A DNA stretch of 64,000 nucleotides from Chrysemys picta bellii (taxonomy: Eukaryota): contig NC_088795.1 in the NCBI RefSeq assembly GCF_011386835.1, forward strand, positions 12,276,001 to 12,340,000, given 5' to 3'. The position numbers and the translations under genes are program-made. Below are positions 2,323 through 58,623 of this stretch, one piece after another; position 1 is the stretch's first letter, and the number at the start of each line of letters is the position of its first letter. The notes beneath the pieces are model-generated. The model saw only the letters and a list, made by a program, of their open reading frames with translations. It ran no database searches and was not told the origin of the DNA.

Positions 2323-3835
2323 GTAGAAAGTACATTTTTGTAATTGAAGAAATATTCAGCATTATATTTGGGCTTTTTTCATTCAGGCAATCTACAAACT
2401 ACTGGCAAGCATCAATGGCTCTTGATTAGAGTAAATAATCAAAACCCTCTCTACTGAAATTCAGAGATGTAAACAATGGCCCAATCTGACACCAACTGAC
2501 GTCAGTCGGAGCTGGAGTGGGCCCTCAGTGTTAATAATATATGCAATCATCATCAGAATGGCTTATTATTGGTATTCACTGGCATTCCCATTTTAATTTT
2601 ACATCGCATTTGATTACTCTAATCCAGTTTTTGAACTGACATTCTCTCTCATTGAATGAATAAGTGAGCATCAACATTTTTATTCCTTCTTTAAATACAG
2701 ATAAATATTCCCCATTCTCCCAAGTTTGCCTCTTATTTTTATAGCAGTAGTGTCCTCGTCCCAATGTCACTCTTCTGTGGTCACTGAAGTGAATAGCAAA
2801 ACTCCCATGGGACCAGGATTGGGCCTTATGGCAGAGACTAAGAACATAAACTGATCACAGGAGGCAAGAGGGAACGCAGTTCATAGTTTTAACACAACTA
2901 TTTCATTCTGGATGATCTTTTCCTCCCCTTTTATATTACCGATGACACATTTCTATAGTAGGTTTTACTATAGACTTATTAATCCCAGCCCTGATCCTGC
3001 TAAGTGATCCATACATGGTCACATCATAGGATCAGGGCATATCAAACACTGAGCATGCTTAAAAAGAAACACAACACACTGCATGTGTAGCAACACATTT
3101 GGCTAACAAAGCCTGGATTGTGAAGGAGACAAATTCTGGTTTCCATTCTAGTGCACGTAGCCTCCACTGACTTCTGGGTACGTAGATAAGGTCAGAATTT
3201 GGCCTTTTGTGTGTAAGCTTATTTTAATATAAAAAAAATCTACATGCTGAACGTGAGCTTTATGATTTACCTTTATGATTTCAGCATGACTGGCATGCAG
3301 TTGAATCTTAGGTTGGAATCTTGCATTACTTGGGCATGCAAAATTCCTACTGACATCAACAGAAGTTTTGGATTTGCAAGGAATTCAAGATTTAGAATAA
3401 ATTTTTCAAAAGTGTGTAAGTGACTTGGGAGCCTAAGTTCAATTTTCAAAAGGTGATTGAGCATTTAGGAGCTTAAGCGTCATTAACTTTCAATGAAGTT
3501 TAGGGTCCTAACTGACTAAGTCACTTTTGAAAATAGGACTTAAGAGTAAAATTTTCAAAAGCATCTTAGTCATTTTTTTTTTATAAACAAGATTGACTCA
3601 CAGAACAACAATACACATGTGAAAGCTGTGATTGCACTTTGTTTTACTCACAATTCAGCTGCAGGAGGTAACAGAAGGTATTGCAACATTTTGTAAATCA
3701 TTCTCAGAGTCATAATATTTTACATGAAAAAATAAATACAATGTAGAAATAAATATATTTGTAGTAAAAAATAAATGTTTTATGTATCAATAAATAGAAT
3801 GACTGGGATTCATTTTTTCGTGTAGCAGTAGCTCT

Positions 3836-3948
3836 CTAGTAAATGAGCTTTTTAGCAGTAATGAGCGTGTTCTTCAAGAGCATGGCAACAGTCATGGGTC
3901 CTACTCCTCCTGGGACTGGAGTGATAAAGCCAGCTTTCTTCTTTACCT
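3836..3948 (-). CDS. MTHFD2L: MTHFD2L exon 8 (last coding exon, 113 nt)
   Basis: ttatattag|AG GTA AAG.. encodes (E)[36 protein letters not shown]. The short KKxIY C-terminus is MTHFD2L-type, not MTHFD2. Confidence 0.97.
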
Positions 3949-4239
3949 CTAATATAAACAGAAAAAAGGATACGACTGTAAGAATATTTCAAAACAATAT
4001 ATTTTCAAAAGCTCTGATATTTCAAAAGTGTGCATGAATTTACTGTATCATCTCAGGAAAGTTTGGGAATCTCACTTTGAAAATAAAAAAGGAAGTCCAA
4101 GTCACCTGTGCATCTGGTGGATGGAATTACAGATGGGCTTCCACCACCACTGTTCTAAAAACGTACCAACAGCAGGGCTGCAGTTGAGATTTGAGCCCTC
4201 TGTCTCAATCTGGCCTACCACCTGTGGCCAGAATACTTA

Positions 4240-4499
4240 GGCCTGGTCTACGCTGGAGGTGGGGATCGATCGAAGTTACGAAACTTCAGCTACGTTATTT
4301 ACGTAGCTGAAGTCGACGTACTTAGATCTACTTACTATGGTGTCTTCACTGCAGCAAGTTGACTGCTGACACTCCCCCGTCGACTCCGGAGTACCAGAGT
4401 TGATGGGAGAGTGCTTGGCGGTCGATTTATCGCGTTTTCACTAGACGCGATAAATCGACCCCTGGTGGATTGATCGCTCCGGAGGCAAGTGTAGACATG
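4240..4499. mobile_element. Harbinger MITE (hairpin family A)
   Basis: Left TTA + GGCCTGGTCTAC, right AGTGTAGACATG (degraded end). Internal hairpins CTTCAGCTACG..CGTAGCTGAAG and GATTTATCGCG..CGCGATAAATC are shared with copies at 12141, 33712 and 58327. Confidence 0.85.
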
Positions 4500-7400
4500 T
4501 AGTGTCCATCAAAGGAAAGGGAGGAGTAAAAAGAGAGAGGAATTTACTGGCTAACATGGCTTAGAGATCTGGGATAAGACCAAAAGACAAAGTTGGGGCT
4601 GAATGGATCCAGCACCTCAAGTAATAAATTCTCACAGGGATCATCAGTTTTACATAATTAGTTTCCTCACAGGAGGCTGCTGAAAACTACACCAGCAACC
4701 CAGTCACAAACCATGAAACATTACCCTCCCCCCACCCCCCGCAGGGTTAGGGCATTCTTTCATTACTCATGAGAAATACTAATGGCAGTATCCTGGACAT
4801 TTAAAAAAACAGCCTTTAAGGGCACAGGAGAAATGGAGAACAGTGTCATGTTAACCTGTTGGCATGGGAGATGGAATTTCTTGGTACAATGTGCTACTTA
4901 TATATTTTGCATAAGGTTAACCATTGGAACTCCAGGCTAACCACTTGCAAGGGAATCATTTCACTTTCAGAAAACCCATCCAATGATGGAATGCAATCAA
5001 TAAATTATGTGCTAGTTGTGGTTATTCTACATGGAAAGTCTATTTCTGCCCTCAACTGTCCAGACTGCTGTAGCTTGTGATTATTTTCGGGTTGTACATC
5101 TTCACCTCCCCACTAGCAGCTTCAGAATTGGCAGTGCTAGCTCTTAAGGAATTGCCAGAAAAATCAAACCCTGTTGTTCCTGCCAAAGGCATGAAACAGA
5201 ATAGAGGAGTGAACTGGAATTGCTAAACAGCATTTGCCACGGAGTTGGACTCTGCATAGCAGGTGGATTCTGCTGGAGAAAGTTTGGGAAAGGCACCTAT
5301 GCACAGCATATATATGTGGATTAAGAAGGAAACATCTTTTTTTCCCCCTAAGTGGACCATGTTCATCTCCGATGTAAGTGGGAATATCCCACCAAAGTCA
5401 GTAATGGGCTGAAATTGCACCATTATTTTCAAATTAGGCATTATATGAGATCCATGGAGATGAAGGGCTAGAAAATTAGGCAGCTAAAATATGAGGAATA
5501 AAGTTACTTGACAATACTACCGATAAATTAAATGTACATGGGTCTGGTGCTCGACTGGTGGAGTAAAATGAAAGATCTTAGAAAGAACCATTGAGAGAAG
5601 AAACTAAGGGTTGCTATTAGTTTAATAGACAGGATATTAATTAATTTTCTAGCTGTTTCTTTGTAACGAACAATTGATTACGAATGAAGATACCTCTCCA
5701 GACTATTTTTTGCAGTTAGGGCCTGATGCTGCATCCACTGATGTAATTGACAAAGTTCCCATTGAGTTCAGTAGCGCCAAATCAAGCCCTTACTGAGGCG
5801 AAATCTAGTAGTGGTAATTAAAGGTGATAGGGTTTTAATTACTCCATTGATTGATGCCACCAGCCATGTTAAAAGCTTTTTGAAAGGCAAACATAAATTG
5901 CAATGTGTTTTTTTGCTTATATTATACAATAAGAATGAATTTGATGAAATATGACAGTCACCCTTAAAATTCTCGGATACATGATTTGCATTTTCTTTTA
6001 TTAGTTTTATAATTTTGAACAAATTCCTACTCGTTTTTTGATTACATTTGGTGTGTTAATTTAGTCAAGTTTTCACTGCACTGTCCCAATCAATGTCATA
6101 GTCACTGAATGGAACTATACCCGGGCCTGAAGTAATATTAGCACATATCAAGACTGTTATCCTGTATTGGGGAGTAACGTAATACTAATTAAAACAGAAT
6201 GCATCTCAAATGGAAACAAATTTGTTTCCAAATGGTAATATTTCATGGTTTTCTTTTCAGAATGCAATTTATACCATCTTATTTACAAAGAGATGCAATA
6301 TACAACCTGAAGATGTTTTTCCTGTAGAAAGCTTAGCAATGAAAATCATGCATAGTATTAATTAATTACCTGAAGTGCTGGTGTCCCTGTTGGGACTAAA
6401 TGCACGGGGTGCTGTTTTTCCCAGATGCTGGGCAGTTCCTATTCTTGCACTGAATGTTAGGTACTGTATCATTATCGTGCATCAGAGTGAGACAGAGGTT
6501 TACTTTTATACTGGCTTACATAACTACCTGCCTAGGATCAGTTTGCGAAGGACAGTCCAAGGGCCACATTTTTAAAATGAACAATAGGTGACTAAGTAAA
6601 GCCATCTAAAAATGAGTTTGCCCTTGCAAAAGGGTGATTGCAGTCTGGTAAATCCCTAGCTAGAGGAGTAAATGTGGATGTGTTGAATGCATTTTTTGCA
6701 GACAAACTTCGGTGCCCAGATCTGAAAATCTGGCCCTGAAACTTCTAAGCAGATTTGGTTTGATTGTGCAGCTTGATAAATCAGCGTGCGGTTTCTGAGC
6801 TGGCGTTTGGATACGACAGACCTATCAGCAGCAAATGACGTGTTGCATTGGCAATTACTTTGTCTCACCTTCACTTTTAGGTGATGTAAAAGCTCTAGCC
6901 TCTGAATCTGCTTTAACTGCATGGAGACTCCTGAAACATACAGTGCCCTAAGCATTTATTTGGCAGTCTGGAAAACGCCAGTATTCTAATTAAGCGCCTA
7001 AGGGGAACGAGTTGTCACTTTGTAGCTTCTTTAGAACTTTAAAATATCTCTTTGATTCTTAACAAGAAATGAAAAGCAGATTGTTTCCTTGACAAACAGG
7101 ATCCTCGACTTTGGAAACAGTCTTCATTTGCTAGGTTCCTTTAAAGTTAAAAACTTCAGACATCGAAGAGGATTAATCACACAATCTAAGAGTAGATGAC
7201 AGTGCTCTCATGCCAATAAACTAGACTCATTCATGTCAAAAACAGCCAGATACAAACATAACTTCACTCTTTGAACTGAACATTTGTGGGTAACAGTCTC
7301 AAGGAGTAGTCTGCAACTTTTGCGGCTCAAAAGTTGATCTGTGTACAACAGTCACAAGAGCATTTTGGCACAAACTTTACGTTTAGCACGTTATTTACTT

Positions 7401-11491: not shown

Positions 11492-12140
11492 ACCCTGTAA
11501 TTTCATTGACTTTAATAGATCTTTATGTGTGAGTAAAGCAAGCAGGATTTTGACTAGTTTATGTATGTGACACTCTAGCACTCCTTTTAAAAACATTTTG
11601 AATACAATTGTGCTGTCGGTCTGAGAGCCTGTATGCCAAGACTTGAAAGATTATTTTTAAAAAATGTGAATGAATTTCATGCATATCAAAATGAGGGGCC
11701 AATAGCTAGAACATGGATAGGTGTAAACTTCCCACACACAGCTCTGTCAACAAACTTTAATTTTGAACTGTAACAATCCTGCTAGTCCAGTCTAGAGCTT
11801 CTTTTGAGCAGACATTGTCAATCAAGACGCATTGTGCAGTTGTTTGGTAATACATTGCACAAAAAAGGACACTAAAATGAGATCAATGTGCACATTGTCA
11901 TTTGTGATCTAAGATAGGATCGTTTGCACCCAGATTTTCAGGATCAAAAGATTTATATATAGCAAGTCTTAGCATGGAGAAAATTACTTAAGCAAAATTA
12001 ATATCATTTTAAAATATGAGTTTCCAGTGGAAGTGCAGAAAGATCCTTGATAACATCAGCTTGACCAGTGATGCTGTAATATGTACTATATGCAATTGGA
12101 GTCCCTAAACTTGTTGAGGTCTGGGAATTGCTTTCTCTAA

Positions 12141-44814: not shown

Positions 44815-45416
44815 ATCTAGATAAAAGTGGGGATCTTATTTCATAGGGTGAAGCAACTCAAGGAACTGAAATCCGACAGGGGTTGGGAATGCTCTACTTA
44901 CAAGAACAATTAGTTCACCAGTTTCTCCAAATTTATAAAGGTAAACATTGTTGATGCAAGATGAGAAGAATTTTAAAAAATAAAAAATAAAGCTAGGTCA
45001 CAGAGCAGTTGGAGTAGATAATTCTAAAGTCTCTCCTAAACAGGTAAGGCCTTGTCTACACTACAAAGTTTTGTCGACAAAAGTGATGTCAACACTCAAA
45101 AATTGACATAATAAAAATAGGAAAGTCATGTTCACACTCGCTCCCTCTGTCGGCAGAGCACGTCCACAGTGGGGGCACTATCATCGACACGGTGAGCAAT
45201 GCATTGTGGGTACCTATCCTACAGTCCAGCTCAACACTTTCTGTTGCTAGGTGTTGTGGGATGGCAGAGCGGATTGCGGCACATCTTGGGACTGGGCTCA
45301 ATGTCCCATGGTGCATTGCTTTCTGTCCCAGCACTTCATGGGCTTCCAGCTTTCTTTCACAGCATTTTTGCAATGGCCCTTCTTTGCTGTGCACCCTGGC
45401 ATCTTTGTGAGAAGGG

Positions 45417-46804
45417 ATGGATCCCGTCCTGCTCTCCTATGCTCTGTTAACTGCCATGAAGACATCACGGATGACAGTGCAGTTAACTGTGAAGTTCCTA
45501 ACTGAAGAAGACTCACAGACACCTGACATGCTGCGCGATATGGATAAGAGCAACTTTAGATTGCTTTTGGCACTCACAGAACAGCTGCATAGGGTAGACT
45601 GTTGCTTTTTAGCTTGAGAAACAAGCACTGAATGATGGGATCGTAGCGTCATGCAGATGTGGGATCATGAGCAGTGGCTACAGAACTTTCGGATGCGGAA
45701 AGCCACCTTCCTGGAATTGCGTGCAGAGCTTGTCCAAGCGCTTCGGTGCAAAGACACCAGAATGAGAGCTGCCCTATTGGTAGAAAAACATGTGGCAATC
45801 GCTGTGTGGAAGCTACTGGATGGTCGCAAATCAATGTGGAGTGGGGAAGTTGACCATTGGGGCTGCATTAATGCAAATGCATAGGGCAATAAATCACATC
45901 TTGCTATGAAGGACCGTGACTCTGGGAAATGTGTGTGAAATAATGGACAACTTTGCAGAAATGGGTTTCCCTAACTGTGGAGGGGCGATAGATGGCACAC
46001 ATACACCTCTACCTCAATAGAGCGCTGTCCTTGGGAGCCAAAAAGTCTTATCGCGTTATAGGTGAAACCGTGTTATATTGAACTTGCTTTGATCCACCGG
46101 AGTGCCCCCCACCCCTAAGCACTGCTTTACCGCGTTATATCAGGTGGCGTTATATCGAGGTAGCGGTGTATTCCAAATTTGGCACCAGACCACCTTGTGA
46201 TGGAGTACATCAAAAGAAAGGGGTACTTCTCCATGGCACTGCAGGCGCTTGTGGATCACTGTGGGTGTTTCACTGACATCAACACAGGGTGGTCCGGGAA
46301 GGTGCATGATGCACGCATCTTCAGGAACACCAGCCTGTACAGAAAGAAACAAGTGGGGACTTTCTTTCCAAACCAGATTACATTGGGGGTTGTTGAAATG
46401 CCCATAGTGATCCTGGGAGACCTGGCGTACCCCTTACAGCCATGGCTCATGAAACCTTACACAGGACACCTGGACAGCAGTAAGGAGTGGTTCAACAACA
46501 GGTTGAGTAGGTGCCGGATGACAGTTGAATGTGCCTTTGGCAGATTAAAGGCGCACTGGCGATGCCTTTATGGCAGGTAAGACCTCAATGAGGATAATAT
46601 TCCCATGGTCATAGCAGCGTGCTGTCCTTGCATAATCTCTGTGACGCTAAGGGTGAAAGGTTTGCTCAGGGGTGGAATGTTGAGGCAGACCGCTTGGCTG
46701 CTAATTTTGAGCAGCCAGATACCAGGACTATCAGAAGAGCCCAGAGGGGGGCAATTCAGATCAGGGAGGCTTTGAGGCAACACTTTGAAAATGAGAACCA
46801 GTGA
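45417..46804 (+). pseudogene. H1 Harbinger (HARBI1-like) DDE transposase, disrupted
   Basis: MDPVLL..QWLQNFRMRKATF..IDGTH|..NRKGYFSM-like..GKVHDARIF..LGDLAYPL..VECAFGRLK..LHNLC..ENENQ*. Several stops, a deletion near 45817 and a MITE insertion. Confidence 0.95.
46004..46168. mobile_element. TA-target MITE inserted into the H1 transposase
   Basis: CACCTCTACC / GGTAGCGGTG TIRs with TA TSD; same family as 43289; removal restores IDGTHIP. Confidence 0.9.
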
Positions 46805-47061
46805 TGTATATCTCTGTGATTGGTGCTTCAATGTTACATTACACATAGTTTTCCTAGGAAGCAATGTATTTGGGGCCCTACATTCCAATAAGCACATGAT
46901 TAACATGCCTGTGCATGTATTGGTAGTGCCTGCTATCTCAATTTGTAGGAAACAGAGATGAGTTACCATTCAAAAATTTTGCTTTTATTGTACAAGAAAC
47001 AACACACACCAACATACAGAGATGGTTGGTGGGAAAGGAGGTACCAGGGAAGGGCAGATTT

Positions 47062-48685
47062 TCACAGCTGTGTGCAAGTCCAGCTACCATTGTGAAAGTT
47101 GTCCGAGGGGGTGGAGTGAAGGGGAAACCGAGAAGTCCCGGAAAGCAGAAAGGACTGTGTGGGTGGAGTTGGGGGGGGGCATGGAAAAGAGTTCTGAATG
47201 TGCTGCAGGGGAGGGCGGGCTCAGATCTGCTCAGTCTGCAGCATTATTAAGGACTTCAGCATCTGCATTTGCTCCTCCATTACTTTAATCATCCACTTAG
47301 TTGCATCCTTAAACTCCTGATTCTCTTTTCTGTCCTGCTGTTTGGCTTCCCAGCACTCCTTGCATTCCCTTTTCTCTGCATTGGAGCAGTGCAGTACCTC
47401 CTGGAACATGTCTTATTTGCTGTGTCTTGGGCGCTTTCTTATCTGGCAGAGACGCTCCGCCGGGGTGCGTGGGGTGTTCCTGAAGGCCACATCTGCCGAA
47501 GCACAAGGGACAATGCATAGACGTGGGATTGTTAAATTCACACTCATGCATTGAAAAATTTCAGTTAAATACACTTTTTGCGACGTAACAATCACTTTCT
47601 CATTGACCCTTGGCAGGCACAAATCTCTGCGAACACCCAAAGCATGGTGAGTGTTGGTGGGGTTGGGGAAAGCGCTCCACATGGGGAAAAGAGCACACAC
47701 TCTGCAAGGGTTGTGGTGCAACCTACTAGGGAAAAAATTCTAAAATTTTCCCACACTTCTCCACAGACAGGGGTCATTGTAGCAGCTCTCTCACTGCTAA
47801 GGGTAAGCAAGGAAATGAGGGTACATCTATTCCATGCTCGTGGCTTCCACCCTACTCCCTACACTGCTTGCCTATGTTCCGCTTTGGTCCCTGCACAAGT
47901 GATCGCCAAATGGCACGGGAAAGTTTCCTACAATGGGGGAAAGGAACAAAGCTGCTCTGCCACGGAACTTTCGGCAGAGGATTGCCAAGTACCTCCAGGA
48001 AACTTTCCTGGAGATCTCTCTGGAGGATTCCTGTGAGATCACGGCATGCATCAACACTCTATTCCGCCGTAATGATTAGCTACACAGGGAAATGTCCATC
48101 ATCCAGAAACACAGACAGCCTCCCACATTTCTATACCCTGAACCCACCTCTGCACTACACAAATCACAGCCATCTCCTCTCCTGCGTCTTGCTCACCAGA
48201 GAGCAACTGCTGAGACTGGCTAGACACCTCTGGAGTGGAGAACAGTTCTTGGCTGCCTGCCCCACCGGGAGCTCCACATTGTCATCTAACTCCATCTCTT
48301 CATCAATAACTTTGTCCTCTTTCCACCACCTCCAGGCCTGCTGAAGTATCTACAGGGACCTTGGCAGCGGAGGTGGGGTTGCCCCCGAGGATAGCATCCA
48401 GATCCTTATAGAACCGGCAGGTCTTAGGTGAAGCACCGGAGTGACGGTTTGCTTCCCTCACCTTATAGTACGCCTGCCTCAACTCCCTTATCTTCGCTCT
48501 GCACTGCAGTGTTCCTGATCATGGCCCTTTTTTCACAAGCCTCAAGAAATGTGCCCGTAGGTATCCCAATTCCTATGGCTCAAGCGCAGCTGTGACTGCA
48601 CAGCCTCCTCGCCGCATATCCTGATCAGATCCAACAGCTCCACAGTGGTCCAAGCGGGAGAGTGTTTGGTGTGATAACCTGACAT
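47062..48685 (-). pseudogene. H1 Myb/SANT-like (MSANTD/NAIF1-type) gene, spliced, disrupted
   Basis: ATG at 48685 after cttcccag|gtaacc; SPAWTTVELLDLI..GEEAVQSQLR..KIRELRQAY..TCRFYKDLDAILGG. 5'UTR intron 48692-48791, coding intron 47493-48196 (gtgag..cttcggcag), last exon KRPRHSK*DMFQEV..QL*. Confidence 0.9.
47644..48079 (+). pseudogene. Third Harbinger gene in H1: BEN-like domain nested antisense in the Myb intron
   Basis: ATG|gtgagt (47644-47652), 120-nt intron ending ..cttctccacag (47766), exon 47767-48079 = TGVIVAALSLLRVSKEMRVHLFHARGFHPTPYTACLCSALVPAQVIAKWHGKVSYNGG/RNKAALPRNFRQRIAKYLQETFLEISLEDSCEITACINTLFRRND*. One extra A at ~47941. 43/90 aa identical to the H2 counterpart. Confidence 0.75.
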
Positions 48686-51600
48686 GGTTACCTGGGAAGA
48701 TGCGATGAGACCTCTCCATGCTGAGCCAGCAGGAAATAGAATTTCAAAAATCCCTGGGGCTTCTAAGGGGGAGGGACAGATGGTTGTTTACCTGGCTGCA
48801 GGACAGTGGAGTTCAAGCTGATGACCAAAGTAGTCACGATGGGCATTGTGGGACACCTCCTGGAGGCCAATTAAAGTGATGAAATCAAGCATGGTGTCTA
48901 CACTGGCACTTTGTCAAGAAAAATTTAGAGAAAAAAGACATACGTCTCTCGTTGGGGTGGTTGTATTTGGTCTCCAAAACCGGGCATTTTTCCCGACAAA
49001 AGTCGCATCGCAGTGTGTATGCATTCACTGTTTTGGTGACAAAAGGCAGTTTTTGATCGACAAAACTTAGTAGCGTAGACAAGGCCTAAGACTCAGAGGC
49101 AGAGTAAGTGGGTTCTAAACACTGTATTGTTAGTAGCCAGCATGCTATATATTGTTAGAGATACAGACCGAAGAAACGTTGAGGATTTTTGTACCATTTC
49201 ACAGCTTCACTCTCCCTCTTTCACACATCCAACAACTAGAAGTCAGACAACTTCTATAACTATGAATAACATTTTAAAAAATAAAATCTCTCTCTCTTAG
49301 AAGGGGGTTAGCACTTTCAAAGCTGAAGTAAAGTATTACAGTTCATAAAGACAGCAACTCTCCAACCTTTAAAGCTCAATCCCGTACATTTTACGTAGCC
49401 AAAACTCTCACTGATTTCAAAAGGTGCATGAGGAAAATGGGATCTGCATTTTATAAGCAGGAGCAACATTAAAAACTTGTCCATCATGCCATTCAGTTGT
49501 CCCCGATTGTAATAGAAATGCTTCATTTTATATACAATATTGCCTGTCCTACAATTACCTTGTAGTAAATTAGTCATCAAAATTGTCAGATCACGAAGCT
49601 GAGGTTATAGATAATATTAGCAATTCTAGAGAGGTCAGTCCCACATTGTTTAAGTATCTAGTCATCTTAGTTTGTTCTTTTCCTTATTTAGGGTCTTTCT
49701 TCTACAGTGTTTCACATTTGGGCCAGCTGGTTACAGGTTACGTTATCCAGATCAGGCACATGTTAATCTTTTATGTTTATATTCCAGCCTATTGCTTTTT
49801 CACAGAAAAGCTAAAGTGTGTGACTTTCAGATATTAGACGATTCATTTTTGCTGTGCCAGGCAATGCAACCCTTAAATATATAAAGCAATAAAATTGTTA
49901 ATCAACGAGAAAACTTGACTCATTTATCTGGTTTGGAACAAGATGTTCTGCATGACCCAATCAATCCAAGACCACCTTTATATGTAAAAATGAAACAAAA
50001 TCTGAAATTATAACCTCTATTTTTGCTTAAGTTGCATCAGGCCAGGTCTGCCTTCCTAGCAAAATATCAAACTGTCCCCTCCTTACACCAATCTCTTCTT
50101 ACAACCCTACTTTATTATTTCAGAAATCTGTGCACCCTCTTTAATATTAATGTGGGCTGGTGTCCAAATGGACCTCAGAACGAAAATTAACTGTGGTCTC
50201 CCCAGACAGATACAGGGGGCCAAACTAATCCACCAAATACAGAACTGCAGGGAAACACAACCCATATTTGTTTCTAACTAAAGAATCTTTCACTCTTGTC
50301 AGGTTGCCACTGTAAAATTACTGTAGCTCTGGGGAAAAAAAGAGCATAGACTCTTGGAACCACTTTCAACCAAGAATTCCAAAATTCGACTTCCCACATC
50401 TCTGGGCAACAGAAATTATAGGAACTTTCATTCTCAAACTCTCTAAAATCTGCCACTATTCACTCCCCTTTATATATATATAGTCTTTAAGTAGTAAGTA
50501 CATGTTGAACTGTACTTGAAAATAGGAGCATGGACTATGGAGTACAGCTTAATAGGCAGCCTGCTCGAAGCACCGCTAAGCAAGTGAGCAGTTGAATTCC
50601 TCACTAGCTGCAGTTTTTGAGTAAACTAACTTTTTCCTCTCGGTCCTATTATAACTACCTTTAACCTTAACTGCCACTCTTATGCTGCTGATACTTAACT
50701 GAACTTGTATTTCAGCTGCTTCTTTACCAACTGCTTTCTGTTGGCTTTCTTGTCTCAAAGCGAGTTTGCAGCTCTCTCTCAACATCCCTCAGTTAACTGT
50801 CTGAAAATGGAAGTCATTCACTTGGACAAGGGCATCCTCAGGAGCAATTCCATCTTCTCCATCCAGATCTCCCATTTGACTCTCCTGTCTGTACCCACTC
50901 GGTTTTCCTTGACTGTGTTTTCCAGTCTCATCTGTCTGATATATGTAAATGTGCATATTAGCTCTGCGCCAACACTGCCTGCATACAATATAACCCTGGT
51001 TGGACTACCCCTCCTCTGAAGTTGTGTGTTTATCTCCTCGCATATTTCAACTCCTTGTCTTTTCACACATTCCAAGGAAAATCAAGGAAGCCAAGCATGA
51101 TAAATATATATATTTAATATTGTTTCTAGACAGGAATATTATATCTTTCTATATTAAATTATGTCTATTATGTCTGACTGCATTTGTATAGAGAACGTAA
51201 ATCTTACTTTCAGAGGATTAAATAAGATATGTATGAAGTACCAGTGGACATGTCTACTCTTCCTGCGAAACACAGAACTGCACAGTGGAGGATACCAGTG
51301 TTCTAGTCTTACACACAGCATCAAAAGAACTGCTGGTGGTCCACATATCCATGACACAAGGATCAGAATCCTATAGGAAGCTTGCTCCCACTTTTCTAGA
51401 TAGGAAGCAGGACTATGAGCAAGACACCCTCCCACTCACACATCTTGCTTTCTTCTTCTGAAAGAGAACTATAGTTTTGTGTCTATACATACGCACATGC
51501 ACACACTATGCAAGGGACCAAGCCCTGCTTTGAACCGAGTTCAATTTAGAATAAGTGAATTATATTGAGTAACAAGAATAACTTTGTTTAGAAAGTATTT

Positions 51601-52559: not shown

Positions 52560-53420
52560 GCTCACAAAAGAATGTAGCTTTTTCAATGTATTTTAACAAC
52601 CTAATGGAGGGTTGTTCCTACCTAGTGGTGTATTTTGCTGAAATCGTTGACATTCAAAATATCCATGTTTTAAGCAAGAAAGATAATCTTCAAGAAGACC
52701 TAAACACATTAAGGGAGCGAACTATCAAACAGCTGATAGATTTTAATATGAGCAAATTTAAGAGCCGAGATGGATTGCTTAAAAACTACAATACAAAAAC
52801 TATAACATGTAAGGTAGAATACTGGAATATCCTGGCAAAGAAAGGAAGGTTTCAAGTTAGCACGGATATGAAAATGGACACAATTTGTTCAGTTAAAGCA
52901 CAGAAGATCAAAAGGATTCCAGGCTACATTAGAAGATGTAAATAAACATAAGCAAAACAAGAAAAATTATACCATTGTAGAAGGCCATGGCAAAGCCCAT
53001 CTGGAATACCATGCCCGGTTTCAGGCATATTACTTCCACAACTATGGCCTTGGCTACACTGGCGCTGTATAGCACTGCAACTTGCTGCGCTCAGGGGTGT
53101 AAAAACGCCCCCGCCCTGAGCGCAATGAGCATAGCGCTGTAAAGTGTCAGTGTAATCAGAGCCTGCAGCGCTGCACACTCGCTCGCAGTGCTGCAAGCGA
53201 TTCCCCCCGGAGAGGCGGAGTACATACAGCGCTGTGAAGTCCCGAGTGTAGCCAAGGCCTATGTAGAAATTCTGGAGAAAAGTCCAAAGAAGATGAAAAC
53301 TCAAACAGTAGTGACGGCCTTATCTATGATAGGCTTCTATAAATTGAAAATAAGGCCATTGGGGGAGAGAGATCTTATTGCGGTTTGTTTATGGAAATGG
53401 TCTTTACAACCCAAGAAGCA
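52560..53420 (+). mobile_element. Ancient CR1/L3 RT fragment
   Basis: ORF 52586-52945 is a decayed IFINDL..FADD..LQ.DL..L..FN..K pattern (YFNNL..FAEI..LQEDLNTL..FNMSK), followed by AKPHLEY-like sequence; interrupted by the 53046 MITE. Confidence 0.65.
53046..53259. mobile_element. Harbinger MITE with H2-type termini
   Basis: Perfect TIR GGCCTTGGCTACACT at both ends, TAT TSD, multiple CAGCGCTG subterminal palindromes. Confidence 0.92.
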
Positions 53421-54091
53421 TGCCACTGCAGATTCCCACGATATGGGGAAAGTAGAAATGTTAAAAAATATTAAATTTTGTATAGATGAAAAGGTTTCAG
53501 CCCTTTTTCTTGTGAAGATAAACTTTAAAATGCAAATCAATGTAAAGTAATCATTAGGCCTTTTGGGAATGGAGCATTAAAGGGTATTTTCACACTTCGT
53601 ATGTAAAAAGAGCCTGTTAAGTTGTGGGTATCACCTCCCTTCAAAAACAAACCTAATCTTGTTAAACCTTCCCAAAACCCTTAGGCCTTGGCTACACTTG
53701 TGAGTTACAGCGCTGTAAAGGCTCCCCCAGCGCTGTAACGCACTCCCCATCCACACTGGCAAGGCATTTGCAGCGCTCTATCTCCGTGGTTGCAGCGCTG
53801 CATGTACTCCACCTCCCCGAGAGGAATAGCGAGTATTGCGCTGCCGCTGCAGCGCTGCGGTGCCAGTATGGCCACCCAATGCGCTGTGAATGGCCTCCAG
53901 AATTATTCGACAGTATCCCACAACGCCTGTTCTAGCCACTCTGGTCATCAGTTCAAACTCTACTGCCCTGGCCTCAGGTAACCAACCATGTGACCCACCC
54001 TTTACATTCCCGGGGAATTTTAAAAATCCCCTTCCTGTTTGCTCAGCCCGGCATGGCGTGGAGTGCTATCAGCGAATCTTTCCAGGTGACC

Positions 54092-55650
54092 ATGCCTCCA
54101 CGCGCCAAGCGAGCCCCAGCATGGAGCAATGGCGAGTTGCTGGACCTCATCAGTGTTTGGGGGGGAGGAAGCTGTATAGTCCCAGCTGCGCTCCAGCCGT
54201 AGGAATTACGATACCTTCGGGAAGGTATCAAAGGACATGATGGAAAGGGGCCATGACCGGGACGCCCTGCAGTGCAGGATTAAAGTGAAGGAGCTCTGGA
54301 GTGCCTACCGCAAAGCCTGCGATGCAAACGGCCGCTCGGGTGCTCCCCCTGCGACCTGCCGATTCTACAAAGAGCTGGATGCGATACTTGGGGTTAACCC
54401 CACCTCCACTCCGAGTACCACCATGGACGCTTCAGAGCCTGGGGGGGAGGAAAGGAGAAGGAGGAGGAGGAAAATGGGAGTGATGGTGGTGGGCCGGATG
54501 GAGACACCCTGGAATCCCTGGAGCCAATGCAGCCAGGAGCTCTTCTCGAGCCAGGAGGAAAGTAGCCAATCGCAGCAGCCAGTACTTGGTGGAGGACAAA
54601 CAGAAGAGCAGGTTCCCGGTAAGCAGGGGTTTTTTTCGGGAAGGAAATTTTCGGTGCGGGCTCTTTGGGAGAGGAGGGTTAGGCATACCTAGATGCGGAA
54701 TAATGCATTGATGTGGTTTATCACATTGCGGTAATCGGCCTCGGTAATCTCCTTGAATGTCTCATCCAGAACGTGAGCAATGCACTTGCGCAGGTTTATC
54801 GGGAGAGCCACCGTAGTCCTTGTCCCAGCCAGGCTAACGTGTCTGCGCCACTGTGCCGTGAGGGGCAGGGGGACCATTGCTGCACACAGGCAAGCTACAT
54901 ATGGGCCAGGGTGGAAGCTGCATTGCAGTAGAAGACCCTCCCTTGCTTCCCAGGTCACCCTCAGCTATTATGCTGTTGTGTAGACCCTGTGTGTTTTCTA
55001 CTCCTTAAGTGTGGGGGGAATCATTACTCTGTCTGGTATAAACAATGCTGCCTCTGTTAAATGTTGCATTTTGCCTATACAGCTGCATCAACCTTGAGAC
55101 CTCAGCCATCCCTCTTATCGCCTGCTCAGAGACTGCAAAGACTCAGGAAGAGACCGCGAAAAAGCAAATAAGACATGCTGCAAGAAGTGATGCGGCAATC
55201 TATTAAAGAGAATGAGAAAGCACAGAACTGGAGGGAGAGAGAAAGCAGGATCCGCCAGGAAAACGCAGCGCACCGGCGGCAAAGCACTGCGCACCGGCAG
55301 CAAAGCACTGATAGGCTCATAAGCATCCTGGAGCGCCAAGCAGACGCTATCCAGGAGCTGGTAGCCATGCAGAAAGAGGAGCAGAACCGCAAACGCAAAC
55401 GCCACCCACCCCACAGCCCTTGTCCCAAAACTCTTTCCGTTGTGCCCCACTGTCACCTCCAACCCACTTTCCCCAACTTCTGTGTTCTTCACGCCACCCG
55501 CTGCCTCCAACACCAGTATCTTCACCACCCAGCCCTGAAAACCACGACCCTTACCCTCTGCACTCAACCCCCATCACCATGCAGTATAGCTGTCCTGAAG
55601 TGCAGCACTCACTGCACAGCACACCAGACAGGACATACGCGAATCTGTGA
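54092..55650 (+). pseudogene. H2 Myb/SANT-like gene, spliced, lightly disrupted
   Basis: MPPRAKRAPAWSNGELLDLISVWG/EEAV*SQLRSSRRNY..QCRIKVKEL..TCRFYKELDAILG. 5'UTR intron 53978-54085, coding intron 54619-55082 (gtaag..ctatacag), last exon KRPRKSK*DMLQEV..TYANL*. +1 G at ~54160. Confidence 0.92.
54689..54964 (-). CDS. Third Harbinger gene in H2: BEN-like exon nested antisense in the Myb intron
   Basis: Uninterrupted frame LRVTWEAREGLLLQCSFHPGPYVACLCAAMVPLPLTAQWRRHVSLAGTRTTVALPINLRKCIAHVLDETFKEITEADYRNVINHINALFRI*, gaplessly homologous to H1 47797-48067. No ATG or clear acceptor is retained upstream. Confidence 0.75.
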   Translation of the reverse strand: MRVTWEAREGLLLQCSFHPGPYVACLCAAMVPLPLTAQWRRHVSLAGTRTTVALPINLRKCIAHVLDETFKEITEADYRNVINHINALFRI

Positions 55651-55687
55651 TTGTACCGTTCCCCACTCCACCCCCTTGTTTCTTTTC

Positions 55688-55725
55688 AATAAATGGATTC
55701 TTTGACTTTGAAAACATTCTTTATT
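55688..55725. terminator. Back-to-back polyadenylation signals between the convergent H2 genes
   Basis: AATAAA (+) at 55688-55693 after the Myb stop, and AATAAA (-) at 55720-55725 after the transposase stop. Confidence 0.65.
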
Positions 55726-55847
55726 ATTGCATAAAGTAAAAGACTCCTTAGCCCAGGAAATAAACAGGCACTGCAAGTCTGCTTAGCAAACACCGATTCC
55801 TAAAGATTGGAACTACTGCACTTCACTCCCGTGCACGGCACCAGATA

Positions 55848-57100
55848 TCACTGTTGGTTTTCAGCCTCAAATCGCTCCCTCGAGGCATCCCTAATCCTTG
55901 CAGCCCCGCGCTGGGCCCCTGTAATACCCCTGCTCTCTGACTGTGCAAATTCAGCCTCCAGGTGTTGAACCTCAGAGGTCCATGCCTGAGTGAAGCTTTC
56001 ACCCTTCCCTTCACAAATATTATGGAGGGCACAGCATGTGGATATAACCACGGGGATGCTGTTTTCGGCCAAGTCCAGCTTCCCATACGGAGATCGCCAG
56101 CGGGCCTTTAAATGGCCAAAGGCACTCTCCACAGTCATTCGGCACCGGCTCAGCCTGTAGTTGAACCGTTCCTTGCTGCTGTCAAGGCTCCTGTGTAGGG
56201 TTTCATGAGCCACGGCATTAACGGGTAAGCGGGATCTCCAAGGATCACAATGGGCATTTCAACTTCCCCAACTGTGATCTTCCGCTCTGGGAAAAAAGTC
56301 CCGGCCTGCATCTTCCTGAACAGCCAAGTGTTCTGAAAGATGTGTGCATCATGCACCTTTCCAGGCCAGCCTGTGTACATGTCAATGAAACGCCCACGGT
56401 GATCCACAAGCGCCTGGAAAACCATAGAGAAATACCCCTTCCGATTAACGTACTCGGATCCTAGGTGGGGTGGTGCCAGAATAGGAATGTGCGTCCCATC
56501 TATCGCCCCTCCACAGTTAGGGAACCCCATTTGTGCAAAGCCATCCACTATTTCCTGCACGTTACCCAGAGTCACGGTTCTTCTGAGTAGGATGCGATTA
56601 ATGGCCTTGCAAACTTGTATCAACACGATTCCAACCGTCGACTTTCCCACTCCAAACTGGTTTGCGACCGACCAGTAGCTATCTGGAGTTGCCAGCTTCC
56701 AGATTGCAATAGCCACCCGCTTCTCCACTGGCAGGGCAGCTCTCAATCTCGTGTCCTTGCGCCGCAGGGTAGGGGCAAGCTCCTCACACAGTCCCATGAA
56801 AGTGGCTTTTCTCATCCAAAAGTTCTGCAGCCACTGCTCGTCATCCCAGACTTCCATGACGATGCGATCCCACCCCTCGGTGCTTGTTTCCTGAGCCCAA
56901 AAGCAACATTCCACGGTGCTGAGCATGTCCGTGAATGCCACAAGCAATTTCGTGTCGTATGCGTTATGCGGCTCGATAGCATCGTCAGACTCCTCACCCT
57001 CACTCTCACTGTCACTTTGGATCTTAAGGAATAGTTCGACAACCAAACGTGACGTGCTGGCGAGACTCGTCAGCATACGCCTCAGCAGTTCGGACTCCAT
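55848..57100 (-). pseudogene. H2 Harbinger DDE transposase, one frameshift
   Basis: MESELL..WLQNFWMRKATF..IDGTHIP..NRKGYFSM..GKVHDAHIF..LGDPAYPL..KPYT(G)/SLDSSKERFN..VESAFGHLKARW..LHNIC..ENQQ*. About 417 aa if a 1-nt deletion at ~56190 is repaired. Acceptor ..ctgtgcag at 57120 precedes the ATG. Confidence 0.95.
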
Positions 57101-58326
57101 TTCCCGCAGACAGATCGCGCTGCACAGAAACGGTTGAAAGATGGTGCCAAAGGTGGACGGAAACAAAGGGATTTCTGGGATGCGAAGCGATGCATCACGG
57201 GGCATTGGGACAGGACCCAGAATCCCCCTTCCCACGCCCCCTTCCCACAACCCACGGCGCCAGAATGGGAAAAGGTGCTCTGTGGGATAGCTGCCCATAA
57301 TGCACCGCTCCCAATAGCGCTGCAATTGCCGCAAATGTGGCCACGACCGTGCGCTGGGCAGCTGTCAGTGTGGACAGACTGCAGCGCTTTCCCTACTCAG
57401 CTGCACGCAGTCAGGTTTAACTCACAGCGCTGTACATCTGCGAGTGTAGCCAAGGCCTTGGGCTGGTCCCTTTGTGAATGCATACATTTTGGAGGGGTAG
57501 GAAAATAAATAGTTTGCCAGTCTACCCAAAATTGCTAAAGCTGGATGGGTCTGCTTAAACTCAGCAACCAAAACAAAAAGACACATGGACATGTGTAGAA
57601 AACAAACAAAAGCATGCACTAAAGCAGTCTTGCACATTTTTTAAGGAAATGTAACAACCCATACACCGAATCTTCTCTCTCACCTTTACCAAGCTGGTAA
57701 GGCTAATATAGAATATATTGTGGTCAGGCATGTAAAATAAGTCCTAAGTGAGCTGACAAGCCAAATTTTTCAGGCTGCGTTAAATACATAGAGAACATAT
57801 TCCATCGTAGAGGTTATTCAAGTGTTCTGAATTTTTAACCCCCAAATGTAATTGCAGAAAGCCCCTTAATCAGGTTTGAAAAAAAAGAAATAAAAGGATT
57901 ACTAGAAAACCAGTGTCTTATTGGGGTATAAAGAGCATTATATGCTATGATGATTATTTACATGTAGGGGATTAAATTTTAAAATGATCGAAAATTCCTG
58001 TTTGTCCCCAAATTGGTTTTTCCATGTATTCTTTAATTTATAAATTTAAATTATTTTAAGGATGCGGAAATTATTTTATTAGCAGTTACAGAGATGAAAC
58101 GGATCTTTATCAGAAAACATATGTGACTTTTGTAAATTTCACTTTGTAAGGTAGGTAACAGTGAGCTAATAACAATATTTTATTTAAAACATTATTTGTA
58201 CCAAGGAAAATGCAAGTGAACTATAACCCTACACATGGCTCACTTTTAAGTACTTCTCACTGAGTACTTCTGCAGAAACAGATGGTAGCTATTTGATATG
58301 CATCTCTATTTTAAAGGAAACTCTCA

Positions 58327-58623
58327 GGCCTTGGCTACACTTACCGGCAAGTTCGACGGCTGGAAATCGAACTTCTGGGTTCGACTTATCGCGTCTAGTC
58401 TGGACGCGATAAGTCGAACCCGGAAGTGCTCGCCGTCGACTGCGGTACTCCAGCTCGCCGAGAGGAGTACCGCGGAGTCGACGGGGGAGCCTGCCTGCCG
58501 AGTGTGGACCAAGGTAAGTTTGAACTAATTCGAAATAAGGTACTTCGAACTTCAGCTACGTTATTCACGTAGCTGAAGTTGCGTACCTTAGTTCGAATTA
58601 GGGGGGGTAGTGTAGACCAAGCC
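58327..58623. mobile_element. Harbinger MITE (family A, CpG-rich copy)
   Basis: GGCCTTGGCTACACT / AGTGTAGACCAAGCC, perfect TCA TSD, family-A hairpins. Confidence 0.92.

What the first reader, a model, noticed from the sequence alone, without database searches (positions are those of the whole stretch)
54689..54964. Same nested antisense exon conserved as protein in a second, divergent Harbinger family (element H2)
SEEN: at the equivalent position in H2 (inside Myb intron 54619-55082, on the transposase strand) is an open frame that aligns to the H1 peptide with no gaps at 43/90 identities by hand count. Conserved blocks are LRV..E.R, FHP.PY.ACLC.A.VP, A.W...VS..G.R, ALP.N.R..IA..L.ETF.EI...D and IN.LFR. 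Conserved residues often use different codons: PY CCC TAC vs CCA TAT; ALP GCT CTG CCA vs GCT CTC CCG; ETF GAA ACT TTC vs GAG ACA TTC; IN ATC AAC vs ATC AAT; L CTA vs TTA. The flanking intron sequence does not align by eye. The segment FKEITEADYRNVINHINALFR resembles the BANP BEN C-terminus (F-GITESDWYRIKQSIDSKCR, recalled from memory). INFERENCE: this is purifying selection on a protein encoded in what would be annotated as intron. It is the strongest in-window evidence that the third gene is real. This copy seems to have lost its ATG micro-exon and acceptor (TAG at 54965-54967 directly precedes the frame).
Basis: partly seen in the sequence, partly recalled or inferred. Interest (0 to 1): 0.9.

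Follow-up and report, generated by a model that had tools for sequence, protein, structure and literature searches.

The report
BEN-fold third gene in Harbinger transposons
Two old, divergent copies of a turtle Harbinger "jumping gene" share a small protein-coding exon hidden backwards inside an intron of their Myb gene; selection has kept it, it folds like a BEN DNA-binding domain, and Harbingers are normally described as two-gene elements.

Summary

- **It is coding.** Codon-position identity is 0.59/0.68/0.41. H1-H2 dN/dS is 0.28-0.30, similar to the transposase (0.16-0.28) and Myb (0.25-0.63). The other five frames have stops. Across 11 copies ML omega is 0.39 (2ΔlnL 76 against omega 1).
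- **It is intronic for Myb.** Spliced contigs from three runs remove exactly 54619-55082.
- **It has a BEN fold.** The AlphaFold model (pLDDT 92) matches BEND3 BEN4 at Z 12.8 (89/91 residues, 1.9 Å) and BANP at Z 10.0. The next non-BEN chain scores Z 2.3. Pfam BEN is not reached by sequence.
- **The start is conserved.** Four families keep an ATG|GTGAGT micro-exon, a 117-172-nt mini-intron and an acceptor.
- **The H2 copy is truncated.**
- **Host genes splice into it.** Turtle gene models splice host exons (PFKFB4, TEDC1 and others) into this exon.

The transcript's 5' end and the protein's function are unresolved. The scan had already found this gene on other DNA of the same genome (s1-314109, s1-312464). 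I found no paper describing it.

The parts
54689..54964 (-). H2 remnant of the BEN-fold coding exon: 91 codons (54964-54692) plus TAG stop (54691-54689). It is 5'-truncated.
   Evidence: Open frame. 42-43/90 identity to H1, E 3e-20. dN/dS 0.28 in this frame only. AlphaFold model pLDDT 92 with a BEN fold, Z 12.8. 39 database relatives, mostly turtle proteins.
54965..54971 (-). Breakpoint of a copy-specific deletion of about 200 bp. The deletion removed the ATG micro-exon, the mini-intron, the splice acceptor and roughly the first ten codons.
   Evidence: Window 55003/54965 corresponds to L002 10093/10327. The L006 and L007 comparisons show the same gap. Contig loose ends at 54965 and 54967 continue into the missing sequence. 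The sequences can be compared side by side.
54619..55082 (+). Intron of the H2 Myb/SANT-like gene; it contains the BEN exon on the opposite strand.
   Evidence: Joint 54617->55082, GT..AG (cut +1), in contigs of runs X1, X2 and X13.
53890..54618 (+). H2 Myb/SANT-like gene, exon 1 region (decayed, in two frames).
   Evidence: Pfam Myb_DNA-bind_4 E 3e-6 on 54237-54692. Homologous to H1 48861-48195.
55083..55450 (+). H2 Myb-like gene, exon 2 (charged, coiled-coil-like tail). An in-frame TAA lies two codons before the ATG at 55175.
   Evidence: ORF 55175-55705. 46% identical to L002 9939-9394. Acceptor position from the RNA joint. The TAA is read directly.
55848..57334 (-). H2 transposase (DDE_Tnp_4), split by a frameshift near 56150-56213.
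   Evidence: Pfam E 6.7e-18 and 2e-9 on the two ORFs.
53684..57457 (-). Whole H2 Harbinger copy. It has perfect 14-bp terminal inverted repeats (53684-53697 and 57444-57457), flanked by TTA and TTG.
   Evidence: The ends agree with the blastn extent against L002 and L006.
47767..48079 (+). H1 BEN-fold exon including its stop codon. The frame is broken by one extra nucleotide near 47944.
47617..47646 (+). H1 30-nt micro-exon ending in ATG (47644-47646). It is followed by GTGAGT and a 120-nt mini-intron (47647-47766).
   Evidence: Sequence. The same ATG|GTGAGT, mini-intron and acceptor are seen in L003, L002, L006, L007 and L008.
45048..49086 (+). Whole H1 Harbinger copy, with terminal repeats at 45048-45061 and 49073-49086. 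Transposase on the + strand, Myb on the - strand.

Best explanation
**What it is.** The stretch is the 5'-truncated remnant of a real protein-coding exon. It belongs to a third product of this clade of turtle PIF/Harbinger transposons.

**Anatomy of intact relatives.**
- The unit lies wholly inside the roughly 660-nt intron of the Myb/SANT-like gene, on the transposase strand.
- It starts with a short exon ending in ATG, with a purine at -3 and G at +4, followed by a GTGAGT donor.
- A 117-172-nt mini-intron follows, then a pyrimidine-rich acceptor.
- The main exon has about 100 codons, then a stop, then AATAAA 53-63 nt later.
- The roughly 100-residue product is a single BEN-fold domain, a 'BEN-solo' protein.

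**Proposed function (inferred, not shown).** Solved BEN domains such as BEND3, BANP and BEND6 bind DNA. I therefore propose a DNA-binding regulator made by the element, most likely acting on the element's own ends or promoters as a repressor or cofactor of transposition.

**What is shown.** The exon is coding, is under purifying selection across families, has a BEN fold, sits in a truly spliced Myb intron, keeps its start and splice signals, and is truncated in the H2 copy. The transcription start, DNA binding and any effect on transposition are inferred.

**Side effect.** The strong acceptor plus terminal exon acts as a natural gene trap, adding a BEN tail to truncated host proteins.
For: **Coding and selected.**
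- Codon-position identity is 0.59/0.68/0.41. dN/dS is 0.28 in this frame only, and the other frames have stops.
- All 21 pairwise comparisons among seven copies have pN below pS, with dN/dS 0.19-0.57 where dS is not saturated.
- H1-H2 constraint (0.30) is like the transposase (0.16-0.28) and Myb (0.25-0.63).
- The codon model on 11 copies gives omega 0.39, lnL -2474.5 against -2512.7 at omega 1.

**Part of the element.** The same position, between the antisense Myb exon 2 and exon 1 and downstream of the transposase, is seen in H1, H2 and L002. L001, L003 and L006 show the antisense Myb exon 1 just downstream of it.

**Intron status.** A GT..AG joint removing 54619-55082 is present in three runs.

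**Fold.**
- AlphaFold model: pLDDT 92, pTM 0.80.
- All top Foldseek PDB hits are BEN domains.
- VIA-align: BEND3 BEN4 Z 12.8 (89/91 residues, 1.9 Å), BEND3 BEN3 11.6, BANP 10.0, BEND6 8.7, NACC1 8.0, then a drop to 2.3.
- AFDB clusters are dominated by 'BEN domain-containing protein' entries.
- The distant relative P0033 touches Pfam BEN at 20.8 bits.

**Start and splice signals.** The ATG|GTGAGT micro-exon, mini-intron and acceptor are present in four families. Models P0006 (M|DEFIVEDISLL...) and P0050 use them.

**3' end.** Poly(A) signals lie 32-63 nt after the stop in L001, L002, L004 and L006.

**Acceptor in use.** Host-gene chimeras end in this exon: PFKFB4 in two species, TEDC1, a kinase, a Rab and a transporter, plus GTPBP1.
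Against: - No read or contig here shows the micro-exon spliced to the BEN exon, and no transcription start was mapped (one search used contigs on a copy that lacks the junction).
- Several gene models instead join a transposase N-terminal exon to the BEN exon: P0044 and P0024 from Malaclemys, and P0003, P0049 and P0013 from C. mydas.
- The third family (L001) has no ATG|GT micro-exon; its relatives carry an in-exon Met instead.
- The peptide does not reach Pfam BEN, and a family profile finds no BEN chain in PDB by sequence.
- Both window copies are dead: H1 is frameshifted and H2 is truncated.
- No test of DNA binding is possible with these tools.
Confidence: 0.8

Rival explanations
1. The exon is an alternative 3' terminal exon of the transposase transcript, not a separate gene. 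Transcripts start at the transposase promoter and either make full transposase or splice from an N-terminal transposase exon into the BEN exon. The second route gives a transposase-N-terminus plus BEN fusion. Such a fusion would act as a truncated regulator, as P-element repressor isoforms do. This partly overlaps the best explanation: one promoter with two products is compatible with the micro-exon ATG being used when the upstream exon is non-coding.
For: - The RefSeq Malaclemys models P0044 and P0024 join transposase residues up to ...WWDRIVLQ to the BEN exon (L001 9963-10370 to 11519-11830).
- C. mydas models P0003, P0049 and P0013 do likewise.
- The exon lies downstream of the transposase on the same strand.
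- AG dinucleotides that could serve as acceptors sit just upstream of the micro-exons.
Against: - The donors used by these models differ from model to model.
- The Malaclemys donor CAG|GTATGG lies inside the transposase ORF and is not conserved in H2, which has GAA|GTCTGG.
- The conserved ATG with a Kozak-like context at the micro-exon end would be unnecessary for a fusion.
- I could not check RNA support for these models.
Confidence: 0.25
2. The exon is a passenger. A host BEN gene fragment was captured once by an ancestral Harbinger and carried along. It keeps a foldable sequence but has no role in the element's life cycle, and the low dN/dS reflects selection acting elsewhere, for example on domesticated host copies.
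For: - The closest structural relatives outside the transposon copies are host-type proteins: Xenopus Pat (TM 0.92), a 292-aa chordate BEN cluster (TM 0.87) and a C. mydas 247-aa protein.
- Many database hits are host-gene chimeras.
Against: - The exon holds the same position and keeps its start and splice signals in at least four Harbinger families. Their transposases differ by about 40% in protein, with near-saturated synonymous sites.
- Selection as strong as on Myb, over that much divergence of the element lineages, is hard to get for a useless passenger.
Confidence: 0.08
3. There is no gene. The similarity comes from chance, from an alternative Myb exon on the plus strand, or from a conserved RNA or DNA element.
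For: - One antisense frame (r2) also shows 37/89 identities.
- Both window copies are broken.
Against: - The r2 frame has stops in both copies and a lower BLOSUM sum; this is the usual echo of a sense frame.
- The third codon position is the least conserved (0.41), which an RNA or DNA element would not produce.
- Myb mRNA splices the region out.
- There are 39 database relatives, 18 of them at E<=1e-10.
- The AlphaFold model is confident.
- The likelihood-ratio test rejects omega 1.
Confidence: 0.02

Closest known systems
BEN-solo DNA-binding proteins and BEN domains of BEND3, BANP, BEND6 and NACC1 (Pfam PF10523; PDB 7W27, 7V9I, 7V9H, 7YUG, 7YUK, 7YUL, 8YZS)
   Same: Same fold over the whole domain: Z 8.0-12.8, 83-89 of 91 residues aligned at 1.9-2.9 Å. 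Like the BEN-solo factors, the product would be little more than one BEN domain. BEN is an established sequence-specific DNA-binding domain (Dai et al. 2013, cited in PMC11601247).
   Different: Sequence identity is only 5-17%. The peptide does not reach the Pfam BEN threshold. It is encoded by a transposon, nested antisense in an intron. DNA binding is untested.
Canonical PIF/Harbinger transposons (two genes: DDE transposase plus Myb/SANT-like protein)
   Same: DDE_Tnp_4 transposase, Myb_DNA-bind_4 protein, short terminal inverted repeats and a TTA-type 3-bp flank.
   Different: The surveys I read describe two ORFs only (PMC4482050; PMC9179366 and PMC9392472). Here a third conserved coding unit sits inside the Myb intron on the other strand.
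Xenopus laevis Protein Pat (xPat, UniProt O73622), C-terminal domain
   Same: Best structural match among reviewed proteins: TM 0.92, rmsd 1.2 Å, 91 residues, 23% identity, E 4.5e-5. This is closer than any canonical BEN protein.
   Different: It is a 293-aa host protein known as a germ-plasm component.
Host-transposase fusion genes formed by exon trapping (transposase capture; from my own knowledge of Cosby et al. 2021, not read here)
   Same: A transposon-borne DNA-binding-domain exon with a strong acceptor is spliced onto upstream host exons. Examples are the PFKFB4, TEDC1, GTPBP1, kinase, Rab and transporter chimeras.
   Different: The captured domain is not the transposase's own DNA-binding domain but a separate BEN gene of the element. 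Whether any of the fusions functions is unknown.

Membership tests
BEN domain (Pfam PF10523) | Sequence match to the Pfam BEN profile at or above the gathering score (23.2 bits) | tested here: not met
   No BEN hit for the window peptide at E<=1. Only 2 of 24 family members touch BEN (best E 0.005). Full-length P0033 scores 20.8 bits, below the cut-off. The family profile finds no BEN chain in PDB by sequence.
BEN domain (Pfam PF10523) | BEN fold: a compact helical domain of about 90 residues, superposable on solved BEN domains | tested here: met
   Model pLDDT 92. BEND3 BEN4 Z 12.8, rmsd 1.9 Å, 89/91 aligned. BANP 10.0, BEND6 8.7, NACC1 8.0. The next unrelated chain scores Z 2.3. Foldseek probability 0.99 and TM 0.73.
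BEN domain (Pfam PF10523) | Sequence-specific DNA binding | not testable with these tools
   Needs EMSA, SELEX, PBM or ChIP with the expressed domain.
PIF/Harbinger transposon | DDE transposase of the DDE_Tnp_4 / Plant_tran type | tested here: met
   Pfam DDE_Tnp_4 E 6.7e-18 and 2e-9 on the two H2 ORFs.
PIF/Harbinger transposon | Second gene encoding a Myb/SANT-like DNA-binding protein | tested here: met
   Myb_DNA-bind_4 E 3e-6 (28 bits against a cut-off of 27) on 54237-54692. Its intron is confirmed by an RNA joint.
PIF/Harbinger transposon | Short terminal inverted repeats and a 3-bp TWA target-site duplication | tested here: met
   Perfect 14-bp repeats at 53684-53697 and 57444-57457, flanked by TTA and TTG (one mismatch). 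H1 has the same repeats with 1-2 mismatches at 45048 and 49086.
Independent third gene of the element | Own start codon, splice signals and poly(A) signal conserved across families | tested here: met
   ATG|GTGAGT with purine at -3 and G at +4, a 117-172-nt intron and an acceptor in H1, L003, L002, L006, L007 and L008. AATAAA 53-63 nt after the stop in L002, L004 and L006. The L001 family has no micro-exon.
Independent third gene of the element | Own promoter or transcription start, and a spliced mRNA joining micro-exon and BEN exon | tested here: inconclusive
   Read laying on the H2 copy gave no such joint, but this copy lacks the junction and the data were contigs. Gene models of both kinds exist.

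The most novel reading that the evidence does not exclude
The BEN protein is a functional third component of Harbinger transposition or self-regulation: a sequence-specific binder of the element's own DNA. Transposon-borne BEN genes of this kind would also be the source of host BEN-solo genes. One candidate is the Xenopus germ-plasm protein Pat, whose C-terminal domain is the closest reviewed structural match (TM 0.92). Part of the vertebrate BEN family would then have been spread or founded by DNA transposons, through the exon-trapping route that is visible today in the turtle chimeras.
Probability: 0.15. Interest if true: 0.85.

Novelty: new variant of a known kind. Interest (0 to 1): 0.62.

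Why it matters
PIF/Harbinger elements are the textbook two-protein DNA transposons: a transposase plus a Myb-like partner. A third, selected, BEN-fold gene would change that picture in three ways.

- **Element biology.** It would add a new player to how these elements are targeted or restrained. It is hidden antisense in an intron, where annotation pipelines and transposon libraries would read it as non-coding.
- **A testable system.** The BEN domain binds DNA, but its link to mobile DNA is barely explored. This gives a direct test: does the protein bind the element's ends, and does it repress or assist transposition?
- **Host gene evolution.** The exon's acceptor is already producing host-gene-BEN chimeras in turtles. 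This is a live example of how new DNA-binding proteins can be assembled.

It also has a practical lesson. Many 'uncharacterized protein' and odd 'isoform X' models in turtle genomes are explained by this exon.

Tried and rejected
- **Pfam on the peptide** gave only noise hits (UNC45-central, SRA_like), which I rejected.
- **ESM Atlas feature search** gave no usable lead; the best score was 0.77.
- **Family profile against PDB sequences** gave nothing below E 0.5; TFIIA and lipoprotein rows were rejected as chance.
- **blastn between H1 and H2** does not see the exon at all. Protein-level comparison was needed.
- **Alternative frames and the opposite strand** were tested and rejected.
- **An alternative Myb exon** was rejected because Myb mRNA splices the region out.
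- **A transposase-to-BEN splice joint** on the window copy was not seen. The copy lacks the acceptor and the runs were contigs, so this says nothing either way.
- **Depth peaks over the BEN exon** in run X1 (about 3,000-5,000 against about 200 beside it) are tempting as a sign of expression. I did not use them, because contig depth is summed over paralogues and the tool warns against ranking parts by depth.
- **Logan contigs L003, L004, L005, L008 and L009** were fetched in the hope of finding spliced mRNA. Those that carry the micro-exon (L003, L008) still contain the mini-intron, and the others run on upstream of the acceptor without a recognisable upstream exon, so none settles the 5' end.
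- **The look-up of encoding contigs for P0024** found no record; P0044 was used instead.
- **Literature searches** for Harbinger with BEN, BEN with transposase, BEN with domestication, and Harbinger with a third ORF gave no description of this gene. Repbase could not be consulted.
- **My first TIR script** printed no matches. The repeats were read by eye from the printed ends and then confirmed by pattern search.
Full report

On the minus strand, 54964-54692 is an open frame of 91 codons. It ends at TAG 54691-54689 and is immediately preceded by TAA TAG. Its translation matches the H1 frame 47797-48067 at 43/91 residues. blastp gives E 1e-24, and tblastn against the whole window gives E 3e-20, with nothing else in the window below E 0.3.

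One correction is needed. The two copies align without gaps only as protein. At DNA level H1 carries one extra nucleotide. The family consensus (VSY.GG.NKAALP) places it near 47944, which gives 42/90 identities. H1 is therefore a broken copy.

**2. Is it coding, or something else?**

- In the claimed frame, identity by codon position is 0.59/0.68/0.41. There are no stops, the BLOSUM62 sum is 190 and Nei-Gojobori dN/dS is 0.28.
- The other five frames have 1-6 stops per copy, sums of -3 to 126 and dN/dS of 0.40-1.58.
- The flanking intron does not align: 35-45% identity in a forced alignment against 55-56% in the exon. blastn sees the transposase and Myb exon 1 but not this region.
- For the same two elements, constraint on this exon (dN/dS 0.30, 47% amino-acid identity) is like that on the transposase (0.16-0.28, 61%) and Myb (0.25-0.63, 44-51%).

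I then added copies from other turtles and other families (L001-L009).
- All 21 pairwise comparisons among seven copies have pN below pS. Where dS is not saturated, dN/dS is 0.19-0.57, and bootstrap support is strong in all but one pair.
- A codon model (GY+F3X4) on 11 copies gives omega 0.39. The log-likelihood is -2474.5 against -2512.7 with omega fixed at 1, so 2ΔlnL is 76.
- These are dead copies whose terminal branches evolved neutrally, so the true constraint in the active lineages was stronger.

**3. Is it really inside the Myb intron?**

Contigs from public runs were laid on 53600-57700. Three runs from three studies and three organism labels show a GT..AG joint that removes exactly 54619-55082.

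The same order is seen in H1, H2 and the C. mydas copy L002: transposase, then antisense Myb exon 2, then this exon, then antisense Myb exon 1. The copies L001, L003 and L006 show the antisense Myb exon 1 just downstream of the exon. H2 is bounded by perfect 14-bp inverted repeats at 53684 and 57457 with TTA/TTG flanks. H1 has the same repeats at 45048 and 49086.

**4. What does it encode?**

A full HMMER scan of 1.84 billion representatives found 39 relatives, 18 of them at E<=1e-10. Almost all are turtle proteins, from Chelonia, Caretta, Lepidochelys, Malaclemys, Trachemys, Chrysemys, Mauremys and Pangshura. The domain nearly always sits at the C-terminus.

Pfam gives nothing for the peptide. 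A distant relative (P0033) touches Pfam BEN at 20.8 bits, below the 23.2 cut-off.

An AlphaFold model built with a 24-sequence alignment is confident: pLDDT 92 and pTM 0.80, with five helices and a short hairpin.
- All top Foldseek PDB hits are BEN domains.
- VIA-align gives BEND3 BEN4 Z 12.8 (89/91 residues, 1.9 Å), BEND3 BEN3 11.6, BANP 10.0, BEND6 8.7 and NACC1 8.0. The next chain scores 2.3.
- AFDB clusters give a long run of 'BEN domain-containing protein' entries.

By sequence this is a divergent branch that Pfam BEN does not capture.

**5. Gene structure**

In four families the exon is preceded by the same arrangement: H1 and L003; L002, L006 and L007 (the H2 family); and L008.
- A short exon ends in ATG, with a purine at -3 and G at +4, followed directly by GTGAGT.
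- A mini-intron of 117-172 nt follows.
- A pyrimidine-rich acceptor then opens the frame 8-10 codons before the conserved D-I-x-L-L-R.
- Intact relatives carry AATAAA 53-63 nt after the stop.
- C. mydas models P0006 (M|DEFIVEDISLL...) and P0050 use exactly this ATG and acceptor.

In H1 the parts are: micro-exon 47617-47646, mini-intron 47647-47766, exon 47767-48079.

The H2 copy lacks all the upstream parts. Three C. mydas copies show about 200 bp missing between 54965 and about 54971-55003. Contigs from other copies run on from both sides of the breakpoint into the missing sequence, including ...EFVLDDISL just before LRVT.

**6. What is not settled**

Other models splice an N-terminal transposase exon into the BEN exon: RefSeq Malaclemys P0044 and P0024, and C. 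mydas P0003, P0049 and P0013. Their donors differ from one another. The Malaclemys donor lies inside the transposase ORF and is not conserved in H2. I therefore favour the micro-exon ATG as the conserved start. However, AG dinucleotides in front of the micro-exons leave room for transcripts that begin at the transposase promoter.

**7. Mechanism proposed**

The product is a BEN-solo protein of about 100 residues made by the element. By analogy with solved BEN-DNA complexes, it is a sequence-specific DNA binder. It most likely acts on the element itself, as a repressor or cofactor. This step is inference.

A demonstrated by-product is gene trapping: host exons are spliced into the exon in annotated isoforms. 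Examples are PFKFB4 (in both Trachemys and Chrysemys), TEDC1, a CDK-like kinase, a Rab3-like GTPase, a glycine-transporter-like protein and GTPBP1.

**8. Novelty**

The Harbinger surveys I read describe two ORFs. Searches pairing Harbinger or transposase with BEN found nothing relevant. Repbase was not available.

The scan itself had already found this gene on other pieces of the same genome, and two follow-up agents reached the same reading (s1-314109, s1-312464). This report adds:
- the cross-family selection tests;
- RNA confirmation of the Myb intron;
- the H1 frameshift and the H2 deletion;
- the conserved start and splice signals in four families;
- the host chimeras;
- the lead to Xenopus Pat.

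Noticed in passing
model of window 54692-54964 (-): The best structural match among reviewed proteins is the C-terminal domain (193-282) of Xenopus laevis germ-plasm Protein Pat (O73622): TM 0.92, 23% identity, E 4.5e-5. This is closer than BEND3 or BANP. A 292-aa chordate 'BEN domain-containing' Atlas cluster (TM 0.87) and a C. mydas 247-aa protein (M7BJY4, TM 0.92) look like the same group. It may be a host relative, or a domesticated copy, of the transposon gene.
   Followed up: partly
P0020/P0043, P0021, P0022, P0025, P0032; Atlas row 1: Annotated turtle isoforms of host genes end in this BEN exon in place of their normal 3' exons. They include PFKFB4 X4/X3 (Trachemys and Chrysemys), TEDC1 X5, a CDK-like kinase, a Rab3-like GTPase, a GlyT1-like transporter and GTPBP1 X4. 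This is exon trapping by intronic Harbinger copies.
   Followed up: partly
window 53046-53259: A pair of perfect 14-bp Harbinger terminal repeats (53046-53059 on +, 53246-53259 on -) encloses only 214 bp. This is a MITE-like non-autonomous derivative lying next to H2. Further single ends lie at 58327, 1958, 12141, 34220 and 62853.
   Followed up: no
L008 (Logan contig, 1648 bp): A fourth BEN family is arranged differently. A transposase N-terminal fragment (8-171) lies about 190 nt upstream of the ATG micro-exon. Myb-like matches lie downstream on the same strand as BEN, not antisense. This is either a rearranged copy or a different architecture.
   Followed up: no
P0023 (Triplophysa tibetana, 1818 aa), residues 1393-1472: A fish protein annotated ZMYM4 carries a stretch 32% identical to this BEN-fold domain (E 8e-9), just before its QRICH1 domain. 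It also has zf-FCS, QRICH1 and DUF3504 domains. So the domain also occurs outside turtles and outside Harbinger.
   Followed up: no
window 54696-54969 and 55655-56065, run X1: In one organism's runs, summed contig depth over the BEN exon (about 3,000-5,000) and over the transposase 3' end (up to about 16,000) is 10-80 times that of neighbouring bins. The contigs come from paralogous copies (many A>G and T>C differences). This may reflect highly expressed chimeric or domesticated transcripts, but contig depth cannot be ranked.
   Followed up: no
L002 10655-10675; window 54619-54640: In intact relatives the BEN gene's AATAAA lies only a few nucleotides from the Myb exon-1 splice donor on the other strand. 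The 3' ends of BEN transcripts would therefore overlap Myb exon 1 antisense. Together with the convergent transposase and Myb transcription, this could make double-stranded RNA.
   Followed up: no
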